Source of the DNA: Saccostrea echinata
Lineage: Eukaryota
DNA length: 64,000 nucleotides
Assembly: GCF_033153115.1 (NCBI RefSeq)
Contig: NW_026889757.1
Span: 4,588,001-4,652,000 of the forward strand
Direction: 5' to 3'
Shown here: one piece after another, positions 13,510 to 38,121 of the stretch
How the letters are laid out: each line of letters begins with the position of its first letter
How positions within the stretch are numbered: the stretch's first letter is position 1
The notes under the pieces: model-generated
The model's database searches: none
Told to the model about the DNA's origin: nothing
The model's input: the letters and a program-made list of their open reading frames with translations, nothing else
Made by a program: the position numbers and the translations under genes

Positions 13510-14060
13510 AGATGTGTAAAGTTAGCTACTAGTAACTGGCTACTAGTAGCTGGCTACGACAAGTGGGTAAAGTTGGCTACTAGTAACTGGCTAGTAGTAA
13601 GCTACAAGTAACTGGCTACTAGTAGCTGGCTACGACAAGTGGGTAAAGTTGGCTACTAGTAACTGGCTAGTAGTAAGCTACAAGTAACTGGCTACTAGTA
13701 GCTAGTTACGACAAGTTGGTAAATTTGGCTACTAGTAACTGGCTACTAGTATCTGACTTGAAATGTGAATGAAGCTAGCTATTAGTAACTGACTACGACA
13801 TGTGAGTAAAGCTAGCTACTAGTAAATGGTTTGCAATGTGAGTAAAGGTTCGCATCTTCTAGTAACTGGTTAAATTACGAATATTAATTTGAAGAAAATA
13901 AAAGTAATGTATTAATGCATTTATTAAAAAAAAATTGAATACAATCTTGTATTTTTGTTTCGCTTGTCAAAATATCTTGTATTAAAATATGCTAATTTTA
14001 ATCTCTACTTGCAGTTTAATACTATCATTGGGTATGCATTTAGCCATAGCATAACCATAA
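13510..14060 (+). repeat. Left outer TIR domain (short GCTACTAGTA repeats plus AT-rich segment)
   Basis: Repeated gctactagtaact/gctactagtagct and gacaagtgggtaaag. The AT-rich segment 13870-14050 is the reverse complement of ~37500-37670. Confidence 0.85.
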
Positions 14061-14099
14061 CAGTTAATGTGCCGTTTCTTTTATATATTTAGAAGAAAT

Positions 14100-17000
14100 A
14101 CATTCCGTCCGATGATCTGGCACTGAGGTTATCAAGATATCTTTAGTGATATACTCAGCTACTCGTACCAAGATATCTTTAGTGATATACTCAGCTACTC
14201 GTACTTTTAATGTAATATGATGCAAGTTTGGGATTCAAATGTTGATATCATTGAAGTAACTGGGTTCTTATTTAGCTAATATCAACTTATACTGCTGATA
14301 TAAACTTTCCGTTTGCTTGCTCTGAGGTTGCCAAGATATCTGCAGTAATATCTTTAGCTACTAGTACTTCTTGTGAAATATAATTAATTTTTGGGTAAAA
14401 TATTAGCATCCTTCAAGTAACTAGTTATTTAGAGAGCTGGTATCTACTGATACAGCTAATCAGACATTTCTTCAAGGTTGTCCACATAAAAAATGACTAA
14501 CGATTTACGTTTATCTTTTGTTATCTTTTCAGTTACTATTATATTTCGTGAGGCATACGAAAAGTAAGCGATACAAATATTGACATCATTGAAGTGACTG
14601 GATTCTAACTAAGCTGATATCTACAAGTATTGCTGAGGAAAGCATTCTCTAAGCTTCTCCACATGATCTGGCACTGAAGTTAACAAGATATCTGTAGTAA
14701 TACACTCAGCTACTAGCACTGTTGTGTAATATAATGCAAGTTTGGGATACATATATTGATATCTTTGAAATAACTGGGTTCTTACATAGCTGATAACTAC
14801 TAATATTGCCGATGAAAGCATTCTCTTAGCTTCTCCAAATGATCTGCCACTGAAGTTAACAAGATATTTGTAGTAATATACTCAGCTACTAGCACTTTTT
14901 GTATAATATAATGCAAGTTTGGGATAGAAATGTTGATATCACTGAAGTAAGTGGGTTCTTACATAGCTGATATCTACTAATATTGCTGATGTAAACTTTC
15001 TCTTAGCTTCTCCACGTAATCTGGCACTAAAGTTAACAAGATATCTGTAGTAATATACTCAGCTACTAGCACTTTTTCTGTAATATAATGCAAGTTGGGA
15101 TACAAATGTTGATATCATTGAAGTAAGTGGGTTCTTACATAGATGACATCTACTATTATTGCTGATGTAAACTTTCTCTTAGCTTCTCCACATGACTCGG
15201 CACTTAAGTTACCAAGATATCTGTAGTGATATCTTTAGCTACTAGTACTTCTTGTGAAATATAATTAATTTTTGGGTAAAATATTAGCATCCTTCAAGTA
15301 ACTAGTTATTTAGAGAGCTGGTATCTACTGATACAGCTAATCAGACATTTCTTCAAGGTTGTCCACATAAAAAATGACTAACGATTTACGTTTATCTTTT
15401 GTTATCTTTTCAGCTACTAGTATATTTCGTGAGGCATACGAAAAGTTTGCAATACAAATATTGACATCATTGAAGTGACTGGATTCTAATTAAGCTGATA
15501 TCTATGAGTATTGCTGATGAAAGCATTCTCTTAGCTTCTCCACATGATCTGGCACTGAAGTTAACAAGATATCTGTAGTAATACACTCAGCTACTAGCAC
15601 CTTTTGTGTAATATAATGCAAGATTGGGATAAAGATGTTGATATCATTGAAGTAAGTGGGTTCTTACATAGATGAAATCTACTAATATTGCTGATCCAAA
15701 CTTTCTCTTAGCTGCTCCACATAATCTGGCACTGAAGTTAACAAGATATTTGTAGTAATATACTCAGCTACTAGCACTTTTTGTATAATGTAATGCAAGA
15801 TTAGGATAGAGATGTTGATATCATTGAAGTAACTGGGTTCTTACATAGCTGATATCTACTAATATTGCTGATGTAAACTTTCTCCTTGCTTCTCCACCTG
15901 ATCTGGCACTGAAGTAAACAAGATATCTGTAGTAATATACTCAGCTACTAGCACTTTTTGTGTAATGTAATGTAAGTTTGGGATAGAGATGTTGATATCA
16001 TTGAAGTAACTGGGTTCTTACATAGCCGATATCTACAAGTATTGCTGATGAAAGCATTCTCTTAGCTTCTCCACATGTTTTGCCACTGAAGTTAACAAGA
16101 TATCTGTAGTAATATACTCAGCTACTAGCACTTTTTGTGTAATATAGTGCAAGATTGGGATAGAAATGTTGATTTTATTGAAGTAATTGGGTGTTAACAT
16201 AGATGATATATACTAATATTGCTGATGAAAACTTTCTGTTAGCTTCTCCACATAATCTTGCACTGAAGTTAACAAAATATCTTAGTAATTTACTCAGCTA
16301 CTAGCACTTTTTGTGTAATATAATGCAAGTTTGGGATACAAATGTTGATATCATTGAAGTAAGTGGGTTCTTACATAGCTCATATCTACTAATTATGCTG
16401 ATGTAAACTTTCTCCTAGCTTCTCCACCTGATCTGGCACTGAAGTTAACAAGATATCTGTAGTAATATACTCAGCTACTAGCATTTTTTTGTAATATAAT
16501 GCAAGTTTGGGATACAAATGTTGATATCATTGAAGTAAGTGGGTTCTTACATAGATGATATCTACTAATATTGCTGATGTAAACTTTCTCCTTGCTTCTC
16601 CACCTGATCTGGCTCTGAAGTAAACAAGATATCAGTAGTAATATACTCAGCTACTAGCACTTTTTGTGTAATGTAATGTAAGTTTGGGATAGAGATGTTG
16701 ATATCATTGAAGTAACTGGGTTTTTACATGGCTGATATCTACTAATATTGCTGATGTAAACTTTCTCTTAGCTTCTCCACATGTTTTGCCACTGAAGTTA
16801 ACAAGATATCTGTAGTAATATACTCAGCTACTAGCACTTTTTGTGTAATATAATGCAAGTTTGGGATAAAGATGTTGATATCATTGAAGTAAGTGGGTTC
16901 TTACATAGCTGATATCAACTAATATTGCTGATGTAAACTTTCTCCTAGCTTCTCCACCTGATCTGGCACTGAAGTTAACAAGATATCTGAAGTAATATAC

Positions 17001-37220: not shown

Positions 37221-37489
37221 CTTACGCTGCAATTTGCACATATATGTACATTATGAAACTGTACTAAACAAATTTACATTGTTAAATCCATTGTATTTAT
37301 TGACTGTTGTACCAAATTTTATATGTTTTGATCAGAATGTAATTTTATTTTGATCAGTAAACTTTTTAAACAACTCATGACAAAATAATTAACGTTTTTG
37401 AAATAAAAAAAAAAGAAGTAGAAGGCTGTTCTGACAGAAGCTATGTCTTCGAAATATATGAAAAATTTAACATAGTTTACGATTTTTCT

Positions 37490-38121
37490 AAGATATGACT
37501 AACTGAATATACATAGGCAACAAAAGTATTAAACTGCAAGTATAGATCAAAAGTAGCATATTTCAATATAGGACATTTTGAAACAAAAATACGAGATTGT
37601 TATTTATTTTTTAAAGGTATTCAATTCATTTTCTTTCAATTAATATGTGTAATTAACCAGTTACTAGAACTACGTTTAAATTCAGTTTCTAGTAGCCAGC
37701 TACTAGAGGGTAGCTTTATTGACATGTTTTAACCAGTTACTAGTAGCTAGCTTTACCCACTGGTCGTAGCTAGTTACTAGTAGCTAGCTTTATTCTGATT
37801 TTGAGTCTTTTACTAGTAGCTAGCTTTACCCACTTGTCATAGCTAATTACTAATAGCTAGCTTTACCCACTTGTAGTAGCTAGTTACTAATAGCTAGCTT
37901 TACCCACTTGTAGTAGCTAGTTACTAGTAGCTAGCTTTACCCACTTGTAGTAGCTAGTTACTAGTAGCTAGCTTTACCCACTTGTAGTAGCTAGTTACTA
38001 GTAGCTAGCTTTATTCTCATTTTAAGTCAGTTACTAGTAGCCGGTTACTAGTAGCTAAGTTTACCCACTTGTCGTAGCCAGTTACTAGTAGCCAGTTACT
38101 AGTAGCTAACTTTACATACCT
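37490..38121 (-). repeat. Right outer TIR domain with 37-bp tandem repeats
   Basis: tagctagctttacccacttgtagtagctagttactag repeats with period 37 at ~37740-38010 and is the inverse of the left terminal repeats. Confidence 0.85.

What the first reader, a model, noticed from the sequence alone, without database searches (positions are those of the whole stretch)
13510..38121. ~24.6-kb Foldback-type (FB-NOF-like) Mutator transposon with modular satellite arms
Seen: matching inverted ends, a GCAAGTAAA TSD, and a host gene that rejoins in frame across the element. Each arm has short terminal repeats, an AT-rich segment and a 177-bp array (~4.9 kb left, ~3.7 kb right), and one transposase lies next to the right arm. 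Established: Drosophila FB/FB-NOF elements have modular repeat-built inverted arms and belong with Mutator-type elements, which make 9-11 bp TSDs. Inference: this is a very large mollusc counterpart that repeat annotators would break into an unrelated satellite, an unknown ORF and MITEs.
Basis: partly seen in the sequence, partly recalled or inferred. Interest (0 to 1): 0.88.

Follow-up and report, generated by a model that had tools for sequence, protein, structure and literature searches.

The report
Giant foldback Mutator-type transposon in oyster
This is a real 24.6-kb "foldback" jumping gene in the rock oyster Saccostrea echinata, with satellite-built inverted arms, a 9-bp target duplication, a distant Mutator-type transposase fused to a deubiquitinase-like domain, and many short relatives elsewhere in the genome; it is a new member of a known kind.

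Summary
Window 13510-38121 is bounded by a 91-nt, 92% inverted repeat and a perfect 9-bp duplication (GCAAGTAAA). Both arms have three modules: terminal subrepeats, an AT-rich spacer and a 177-bp array.

A 14-nt motif occurs 13 times at one end and 12 times, inverted, at the other. It occurs nowhere else in the 64 kb.

The same termini lie at about 28 other loci. Nine independent insertions in all have perfect 9-bp duplications. One is a gap-free 25.4-kb copy, collinear with this one.

The 896-aa ORF has no Pfam match. A profile-profile comparison links it to MULE transposases of the same genome (94.9%, E 4e-8). Its best structural match is the IS256-family transposase ISCth4. Its C-terminus has a USP fold.

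The closest described group is Rehavkus, the foldback branch of the MULE superfamily. I could not align to Rehavkus or Drosophila NOF references.

Corrections:
- The host laccase is a pseudogene. Rejoining it restores the frame but leaves two stops.
- A 44-nt deletion separates the N-terminal 284 aa from the transposase core.
- Both assembly gaps lie beside nested high-copy repeats in an 8.6-kb segment, not in arms or ORF. No reads were available to bridge them.

First readers of this scan noted other foldback-like elements on other DNA of this genome; I did not check those.

The parts
13501..13509 (.). Left copy of the 9-bp target-site duplication, GCAAGTAAA
13510..13850 (+). Left terminal subrepeat domain (76-bp units). 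Carries 13 same-strand copies of the 14-nt motif GCTACTAGTAACTG, the candidate transposase-binding sites.
13851..14111 (.). Left AT-rich spacer (GC 0.26)
14112..18447 (+). Left 177-bp tandem array, about 22-24 units, 82% matches
18448..21793 (.). Non-coding internal segment shared with the sibling long copy (C6/C33)
21794..30300 (.). Segment absent from the sibling copy. It is mostly single-copy DNA plus three nested high-copy repeats (23377-24680; 24904-25827; 28239-28981) and the two assembly gaps (24765-24903; 25828-25969). The sibling's junction shows microhomology and also removes the first ~45 codons of ORF1, so the sibling is the deleted form.
30301..31155 (+). ORF1: acidic, low-complexity N-terminal part of the transposase gene (first ATG at 30316). 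It is out of frame with the core because of a 44-nt deletion at about 31128/31129, relative to the sibling copy and to P0002.
31118..32992 (+). ORF2, core part: Zn-finger-like N-terminus plus RNase-H-like DDE domain. D198 at nt 31709, D271 at 31928, C316xxH319, E491 at 32588. MULE-related.
32993..33808 (+). ORF2, C-terminal USP-fold domain (residues 626-893). Has a Cys box NTC (C651) and a His box HGHF (H846).
34276..36745 (-). Right-arm 177-type array. Degenerate, inverted relative to the left array, 72-85% complementary.
36811..37689 (.). Right AT-rich spacer (GC 0.29). Block 37525-37581 matches 13967-14023 in inverted orientation.
37690..38121 (-). Right terminal subrepeat domain (37/74-bp units). 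Carries 12 copies of the 14-nt motif, all on the minus strand.
38122..38130 (.). Right copy of the 9-bp target-site duplication
13404..13509 (+). Host laccase pseudogene, 5' part (signal peptide, then a TGA stop), cut off by the insertion
38131..39194 (+). Host laccase pseudogene, remainder. Cu-oxidase_3 domain, internal deletion and frameshift.

Best explanation
Window 13510-38121 is one insertion of a cut-and-paste DNA transposon of the foldback type. It belongs to the Mutator/MULE superfamily, most like the Rehavkus group.

Inferred mechanism: a DDE transposase (D198, D271, E491, with a CxxH motif) binds the oriented arrays of a 14-nt motif in the two terminal subrepeat domains. It pairs the ends, excises the element and reinserts it with a 9-bp staggered cut.

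Short copies of 0.8-3.3 kb keep only the termini and some 177-bp units, and are mobilised in trans. The 177-bp arrays inside the arms grow and shrink by unequal exchange, which would explain why the arms differ in length and between copies.

The transposase carries a C-terminal USP-fold cysteine-protease domain. I presume this acts on host ubiquitin or SUMO conjugates during transposition.

This copy landed in exon 1 of an already disabled laccase paralogue. It later acquired three unrelated repeat insertions and a 44-nt frameshifting deletion near the 5' end of its gene.

Shown: the anatomy, the TSDs, the family of copies and the homology. Inferred: DNA binding at the motif arrays, trans-mobilisation and the role of the protease domain.
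For: Ends and motif:
- TIR 91 nt, 92%. Identical 9-bp TSD (chance about 4e-6).
- The 14-nt motif occurs 25 times, only in the two terminal domains, in one orientation per end. Expected by chance: 0.26.

Family of copies:
- The termini recur at about 28 other loci, mostly as inverted pairs 0.8-3.3 kb apart with 177-bp units inside.
- Perfect 9-bp TSDs: C88 TGTATATGT, C34 TGCGCATAT, C9 ACATTTAGT, C62 CGAAAATAT, C8:11.24 Mb ACACTTTGA, C86 TACGCAGAC, and the 25.4-kb copy at C6 TCTAATGAA. C1 matches 8 of 9.
- The C6 copy has no gaps. It has only two termini and is collinear with the window: arm, internal segment, ORF, arm.
- Laccase paralogue L053 aligns without a gap across the insertion point.

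Transposase:
- The family profile finds 5694 proteins at E<=1e-3.
- hhalign against PF10551-bearing proteins of the same genome gives 94.9%, E 4.3e-8, with both D residues and CxxH in register.
- Atlas best clusters: MULE 0.96 and 'NOF-FB transposable element protein' 0.94.
- AF2 core pLDDT is about 90.
- Best solved transposase match is ISCth4, IS256 family: Foldseek E 7.8e-5; VIA Z 13.2, against Hermes 11.9 and P element 10.9.

USP domain:
- USP fold at residues 626-893, Z 11.4 to USPL1.
- Distant relatives in the same genome carry Pfam UCH at the aligned position.

Literature:
- Foldback elements with composite TIRs and 9-bp TSDs belong to the Mutator superfamily (PMC3169594, PMC4079207).
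- Rehavkus is described as MULE-related, with 9-bp TSD, long TIRs with subterminal tandem repeats and a PHD finger (PMC6446971; bioRxiv 10.1101/2024.12.02.626372).
- PHD fingers occur in 5 of the 42 aligned sequences. They lie N-terminal of the core in 3 further family members whose positions were listed.
Against: - Pfam MULE (PF10551), FLYWCH and every other model fail on the ORF and on 42 relatives, even at loose thresholds.
- The structural lead of ISCth4 over Hermes is only about 1.3 Z.
- No alignment to a Rehavkus or NOF reference was possible.
- The window's own protein has no PHD finger.
- No copy in this assembly encodes the full protein. The window copy is frameshifted at about 31128, and the C6/C33 copy has 21 stops.
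- No expression or excision data were available, since no run was listed.
- Two assembly gaps lie inside the element and could not be bridged.
- Two short copies (C56, C52) show no TSD.
Confidence: 0.88

Rival explanations
1. Composite or coincidental structure: two independent short foldback elements happen to flank unrelated DNA that carries an unrelated ORF, so the 24.6 kb is not one mobile unit.
For: Short copies made only of termini plus 177-bp units are common. 8.6 kb of the interior is missing from the sibling copy and contains gaps.
Against: - Only two terminal domains exist in the element, one at each outer end and inverted. There are no inner termini.
- The outer ends share a perfect 9-bp TSD.
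- An independent gap-free 25.4-kb copy has the same order of parts and its own 9-bp TSD.
Confidence: 0.03
2. The element is a foldback transposon, but its transposase belongs to another superfamily with a CxxH motif (hAT, P, Kolobok), as Galileo belongs to P. The MULE link would then be only shared RNase-H ancestry.
For: No Pfam MULE hit. Hermes and P element also score Z 11-12. Foldback architecture has arisen in more than one superfamily (PMC3169594, PMC4079207).
Against: - The 9-bp TSD is typical of MULE/IS256. From my own knowledge, hAT makes 8 bp and P makes 7-8 bp.
- hhalign to MULE gives E 4e-8 with the catalytic residues in register.
- All ten best named Atlas hits share the MULE family or clan.
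- ISCth4 ranks first in both Foldseek and VIA.
- A 'TNxxxE' signature surrounds the third catalytic residue in both this family and the MULE set.
Confidence: 0.07
3. Assembly artefact: the interior, or the junction of the two arms, was mis-joined at the N gaps.
For: Two gaps border high-copy repeats. No reads were available.
Against: - TSD identity and host-gene continuity across the whole element.
- Sequence on both sides of the gap-bearing segment is collinear with the gap-free C6 copy.
Confidence: 0.04

Closest known systems
Rehavkus DNA transposons (Repbase; treated as part of, or sister to, the MULE superfamily)
   Same: 9-bp TSD. [quoted passage not shown] A single MULE-like DDE transposase too divergent for canonical MULE models. 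PHD fingers in relatives. Sources: PMC6446971; bioRxiv 10.1101/2024.12.02.626372.
   Different: Rehavkus was reported only from insects and annelids as of 2019; this host is a bivalve. The window's protein has no PHD finger and has a C-terminal USP-fold domain, which those papers do not mention. No sequence comparison with a Rehavkus reference was possible.
Drosophila Foldback (FB / FB-NOF)
   Same: Modular inverted arms built from tandem subrepeats, heterogeneous copy sizes, 9-bp TSD, and assignment to the Mutator superfamily in the literature (PMC4079207). An Atlas cluster named 'NOF-FB transposable element protein' is the second-best feature match.
   Different: No alignment to NOF was made. 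The arm repeat units (37/76 bp and 177 bp) are unrelated to those of FB. By the title of Badal et al. 2013, FB-NOF is itself non-autonomous.
Tm1 of root-knot nematodes (Mutator/Foldback, Phantom subclass)
   Same: Composite TIRs of variable length, mostly 9-bp TSDs, and MITE-like, intermediate and transposase-bearing classes (PMC3169594).
   Different: The Tm1 transposase has recognisable FLYWCH and MULE domains. This protein matches neither Pfam model. Tm1 elements are far smaller.
Tetris of Drosophila virilis
   Same: A foldback element whose arms carry a satellite (about 220 bp) that can expand; 8-10 bp TSDs (PMC4079207).
   Different: No transposase-bearing Tetris copy is known. Here two long copies carry the gene.
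ISCth4 / IS256-family transposase (PDB 6xgx)
   Same: Best structural match of the catalytic core: Z 13.2, 234 residues aligned.
   Different: It is a bacterial copy-out/paste-in insertion sequence. Sequence identity is 11%. It has no foldback arms and no USP domain.

Membership tests
Foldback-type transposons (structural class) | Long inverted arms built from tandem subrepeats | tested here: met
Foldback-type transposons (structural class) | Family of copies with shared termini and very different lengths, including near-perfect hairpins with no middle domain | tested here: met
   L017 and L018 are 93% self-inverted.
Mutator/MULE superfamily | TSD of 8-11 bp, typically 9 | tested here: met
   Nine independent perfect 9-bp TSDs
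Mutator/MULE superfamily | Transposase recognised by the MULE domain model (PF10551) | tested here: not met
   No hit for the ORF at E<=10, nor for 42 relatives at E<=0.01
Mutator/MULE superfamily | Homology of the DDE core, with CxxH motif, to MULE transposases | tested here: met
   hhalign 94.9%, E 4.3e-8, with D, D and CxxH in register. Atlas MULE 0.96.
Mutator/MULE superfamily | Catalytic fold closest to the IS256/MULE lineage rather than other DDE superfamilies | tested here: inconclusive
   ISCth4 ranks first (Z 13.2), but Hermes scores 11.9 and P element 10.9
Rehavkus | 9-bp TSD and long TIRs with subterminal tandem repeats | tested here: met
   description in PMC6446971 and 10.1101/2024.12.02.626372
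Rehavkus | PHD finger in the transposase | tested here: not met
   None in the window's ORF1 or ORF2. Present in 5 of the 42 aligned sequences. Lies N-terminal of the core in 3 further family members.
Rehavkus | Sequence similarity to Rehavkus reference transposases | not testable with these tools
   No Repbase sequences were available
Drosophila FB-NOF | Sequence similarity to the NOF protein or to FB arm repeats | tested here: inconclusive
   Only an Atlas feature match of 0.94 to a cluster so named. No alignment was made.
USP (peptidase C19) deubiquitinases, C-terminal domain only | USP fold with Cys box and His box | tested here: met
   Foldseek prob 1.0 to USP12/46. VIA Z 11.4 over residues 626-893. 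NTC at 649-651 and HGHF at 844-847. Pfam UCH fails on the window protein but hits relatives at the aligned position.

The most novel reading that the evidence does not exclude
The transposase may represent a large clade of MULE/Rehavkus-related transposases that has no Pfam model. It would be spread across metazoans, including fishes and a lizard. Its ancestral architecture would be (PHD)-Zn finger-DDE-USP(-ULP), and its typical vehicle a giant foldback element with satellite arms. On this reading the ubiquitin/SUMO-protease module is an integral, functional part of foldback transposition. The oyster genome would also hold a still-active sister family: three ~99% identical copies of at least 21.5 kb with intact ORFs.
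Probability: 0.35. Interest if true: 0.7.

Novelty: new member of a known kind. Interest (0 to 1): 0.52.

Why it matters
For most foldback elements (Drosophila FB, Tetris, many plant families) the protein that moves them is unknown or disputed. Here short foldbacks and two long gene-bearing copies share termini and 9-bp TSDs, which ties a specific transposase clade to foldback arms in a mollusc.

The locus also shows a 177-bp satellite confined to transposon arms, which bears on how satellites are born from mobile elements in bivalves. The USP-fold fusion gives a testable accessory function.

Practically, an annotator that sees the pieces separately could miss the unit: a 177-bp 'satellite', an ORF with no Pfam match, and MITE-like termini.

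Tried and rejected
- Pfam on the ORFs at E<=10 found nothing.
- Pfam on 42 relatives gave only accessory domains: PHD, UCH and C48.
- Sequence searches of the PDB, with the C-terminal domain and with the family profile, found nothing useful.
- The search for homologous proteins with the ORF and with the profile gave few, unnamed hits. None was named NOF or Rehavkus. The listing of cluster members gave no informative names.
- The look-up of sequencing runs listed no run, so read laying could not be used. The gaps, an empty-site allele and expression therefore remain untested.
- A search for an empty-site copy of the left flank in the assembly found only the locus itself. The first 140 bases of that query are another repeat.
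- Literature searches for a USP or deubiquitinase fused to a Mutator-like transposase, and for Rehavkus together with NOF, found nothing relevant.
- Rejected: a simple nested-insertion reading of 21794-30434. The sibling's junction has microhomology and also removes coding sequence of ORF1, so the sibling is a deletion derivative.
- I did not fetch or infer the letters of the N runs.
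Full report

The repeat finder reports inverted arms 13510-13600 / 38031-38121 (91 nt, 92%), plus many inverted matches between 14.3-18.4 kb and 34.3-36.1 kb. Reading both ends shows the element starts AGATGTGTAAAG... on the left and, in reverse complement, AGGTATGTAAAG... on the right. The same nine bases, GCAAGTAAA, flank it at 13501-13509 and 38122-38130.

TRF and the repeat finder give 76-bp and 37/74-bp terminal subrepeats and a 177-bp array of about 22 units on the left. 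A minus-strand BLAST of arm against arm, together with GC values, resolves three modules in each arm:
- Left: subrepeats 13510-13850, AT-rich spacer 13851-14111 (GC 0.26), array 14112-18447.
- Right: subrepeats 37690-38121, AT-rich spacer 36811-37689 (GC 0.29), array 34276-36745.

A 14-nt motif, GCTACTAGTAACTG (up to 2 mismatches), occurs 13 times on the plus strand within 13525-13868 and 12 times on the minus strand within 37683-38106. It occurs nowhere else in the 64 kb. The chance expectation is 0.26, and the largest count in 100 shuffles was 2.

**2. The gaps**

The N runs are 24765-24903 and 25828-25969. Comparison with a second long copy (section 3) shows that window 21794-30434 has no counterpart there.

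Genome-wide searches show what this segment is made of:
- Single-copy DNA.
- A 1.3-kb repeat at 23377-24680.
- A 743-bp repeat at 28239-28981 (94-97% identical copies, more than 8000 first-look candidates).
- The whole block between the two gaps, 24904-25827, which is 94% identical to members of a repeat with more than 1000 candidates. The matches run to both gap edges.

So the gaps sit beside nested high-copy repeats and touch neither an arm nor the ORF. The 'ORFs' across them are runs of X.

No public run was listed, so continuity could not be tested with reads. I did not look up the missing letters. Three things give indirect support that the arms are on one molecule: the identical TSD, the host gene continuing on both sides, and the gap-free collinear copy.

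**3. Is it a mobile family?**

The terminal 91 nt gives 157 matches at about 28 other loci. This is a lower bound, because only 40 of 60 candidates were scored. Most are plus/minus pairs 0.8-3.3 kb apart. The 177-bp unit is found at largely the same loci and otherwise at only a few places, so it is element-bound rather than a major satellite.

I fetched 14 loci and read the junctions. Perfect 9-bp duplications flank the copies at:
- C88: TGTATATGT
- C34: TGCGCATAT
- C9: ACATTTAGT
- C62: CGAAAATAT (C54 is a duplicate of this locus, with the same flanks)
- C8:11.24 Mb: ACACTTTGA
- C86: TACGCAGAC

C1 matches 8 of 9. C56 and C52 show no duplication.

Two 3.3-kb copies (L017, L018) are true hairpins. 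They are 93% self-inverted, with 177-bp units in plus orientation and then in minus orientation meeting in the middle. The 1.6-2.3-kb copies keep the terminal domains and a one-sided run of units.

Two long copies carry a degenerate version of the ORF: C6:13838338-13863736 and C33:228974-287482. They share flanks at 99% identity, so they are one insertion later duplicated, with extra insertions in C33. The C6 copy is 25.4 kb with no N. It has termini only at its two ends and a perfect TSD, TCTAATGAA. It is collinear with the window in reverse orientation: arm, 18.6-21.8 kb segment, ORF, arm.

That makes nine independent insertions with 9-bp TSDs, two of them full-length. The unit transposes as a whole.

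**4. The protein**

ORF 31118-33808 (896 aa) and the upstream ORF 30301-31155 (284 aa, acidic) have no Pfam match even at E<=10.

Homologue P0002 and the C33 copy read straight through from the ORF1 tail (...EWVKLPF...RRLxGN) into the core (...CVLVFKYNR). They do so via 14 residues that the window lacks. The window has a 44-nt deletion at about 31128/31129 that shifts the frame. The window gene is therefore nearly intact but not complete.

The only other copy of this family is riddled with stops.

A profile of the core (A2) finds 5694 proteins at E<=1e-3 and 826 at E<=1e-30 among 1.84 billion representatives. Named hits come from a lizard and from fishes.

Invariant residues across 42 sequences are D195, T197, C313, H316, N441, E488 and K495. 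D268 is nearly invariant (at least 90%). These are core numbering; in ORF numbering the catalytic and motif residues are D198, D271, C316, H319 and E491.

None of the 42 sequences hits Pfam MULE. Accessory hits are PHD (5), UCH (2) and Peptidase_C48 (2). In further family members PHD lies N-terminal of the core and UCH lies C-terminal.

To test the Mutator link, I collected PF10551-positive ORFs from the same genome and ran a profile-profile comparison. The result was probability 94.9%, E 4.3e-8 over 171 columns, with the first D, the second D and CxxH in register.

Three further lines agree:
- Atlas features: a MULE cluster scores 0.96 and a cluster named 'NOF-FB transposable element protein' scores 0.94. 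All ten best named hits are in the same family or clan.
- Structure: the AlphaFold model has mean pLDDT 76 and about 90 over residues 20-390. Its best transposase match is ISCth4, which from my own knowledge is IS256 family, the bacterial kin of MULEs. Foldseek gives E 7.8e-5. VIA gives Z 13.2 over 234 residues, ahead of Hermes at 11.9 and P element at 10.9. This margin is small.
- TSD length: 9 bp is the MULE/IS256 norm (PMC3169594).

**5. The C-terminal domain**

Residues 626-893 align to USP-fold enzymes: USP12/46 at Foldseek probability 1.0, and USPL1 at Z 11.4 over 229 of 266 residues. The Cys box (SNTC, C651) and His box (HGHF, H846) are present.

Distant relatives in the same genome (25% identity, 1333-aa ORF) have a Pfam UCH hit at the aligned position. 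A second ORF follows with the rest of UCH plus a Ulp1/C48 domain.

**6. The host locus**

The best hit of a laccase paralogue is Saccostrea echinata (92% identity). The contig length reported for that hit, 12,911,633, equals that of C8, so the genome is this oyster's.

At least eight laccase paralogues lie on C8 between 4.26 and 4.63 Mb. Paralogue L053 reads ...QGYWKSPDAGPTCKVNTCRESDDVCEC... without interruption. The window's rejoined sequence reads ...AQ*YWKSPEEGKTCK*NTCRENDDVCEC... and aligns to L053 DNA with no gap at the junction.

The element therefore sits in exon 1 coding sequence, and the paralogue serves as an empty-site proxy. The TAA lies in both TSD copies, so it predates the insertion. 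The copy also lacks residues 252-493 and is frameshifted. It was already a pseudogene.

**7. Comparison with known families**

Foldback elements with composite TIRs and 9-bp TSDs are grouped with Mutator (PMC4079207, PMC3169594).

Rehavkus is described as MULE-like but divergent. It is used as the outgroup of MULEs, has a 9-bp TSD, TIRs up to 400 bp, a minisatellite and a PHD finger, and was known only from insects and annelids (PMC6446971). In Tribolium it is described as foldback transposons carrying satellites in inverted termini that can exceed 11 kb (bioRxiv 10.1101/2024.12.02.626372). Yuan and Wessler's framework counts MULE as Mutator plus Rehavkus (bioRxiv 10.1101/2021.09.26.461848).

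The oyster element fits this description in TSD length, arm design, divergence from canonical MULE and PHD fingers in relatives. It differs in host phylum, in lacking a PHD finger itself, and in the USP-fold fusion. I found no paper describing that fusion.

Membership in Rehavkus or the NOF lineage by sequence could not be tested. The oyster satellite papers I checked cite foldback elements only through Tetris.

**8. Verdict**

This is a real and well-delimited foldback transposon of the MULE superfamily, a new member of a known kind. Its accessory-domain architecture is unusual, and it is a useful case linking gene-bearing and short foldback copies.

Noticed in passing
L060+L027+L063 = G000:C30:34724000-34745500; also C3:9570000-9591500 and C9:36.30 Mb: A second, apparently young giant foldback family. 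It has at least 21.5 kb, and the C30 and C3 copies are 99% identical over the whole fetched length. A 323-328-bp satellite lies in inverted orientation on both sides. Intact ORFs of 1333 aa (related transposase plus the start of UCH) and 796 aa (rest of UCH plus Ulp1/C48) are present.
   Followed up: partly
window 28239-28981: A 743-bp interspersed repeat with 94-97% identical copies genome-wide and more than 8000 first-look candidates. It is probably a young MITE or SINE nested in the element.
   Followed up: no
window 23377-24680 and 24904-25827: Two further high-copy repeats: a 1.3-kb GC-richer one and a block of at least 924 bp. The second fills the space between the two assembly gaps, which probably explains the gaps.
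   Followed up: partly
G000:C8 4.26-4.63 Mb (L053-L059): A tandem cluster of at least eight single-exon laccase (multicopper oxidase) paralogues of about 690 aa. The window's copy is a decayed member.
   Followed up: partly
G000:C6:13838000-13864100 versus C33:228600-287800: The same element insertion with its flanks is present twice at about 99% identity. The C33 version is 33 kb longer through extra insertions. This is a segmental duplication or an uncollapsed haplotype.
   Followed up: partly
P0012: A 1067-aa homologue of this eukaryotic transposase is deposited as a protein of a Sedimenticola sp. MAG (MES9880808.1). It is probably host or eukaryotic DNA binned into a bacterial MAG.
   Followed up: no
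window 13050-13190: The end of another high-copy repeat (634 candidates, 95-99% identical) lies just upstream of the laccase start.
   Followed up: no
L005 = G000:C33:33193976-33198646: A 31%-identical relative of the transposase, with an open 726-aa frame preceded by an overlapping 252-aa ORF in another frame. This is the same two-ORF layout as in the window. I did not examine whether it is a frameshift, an intron or coincidence.
   Followed up: no
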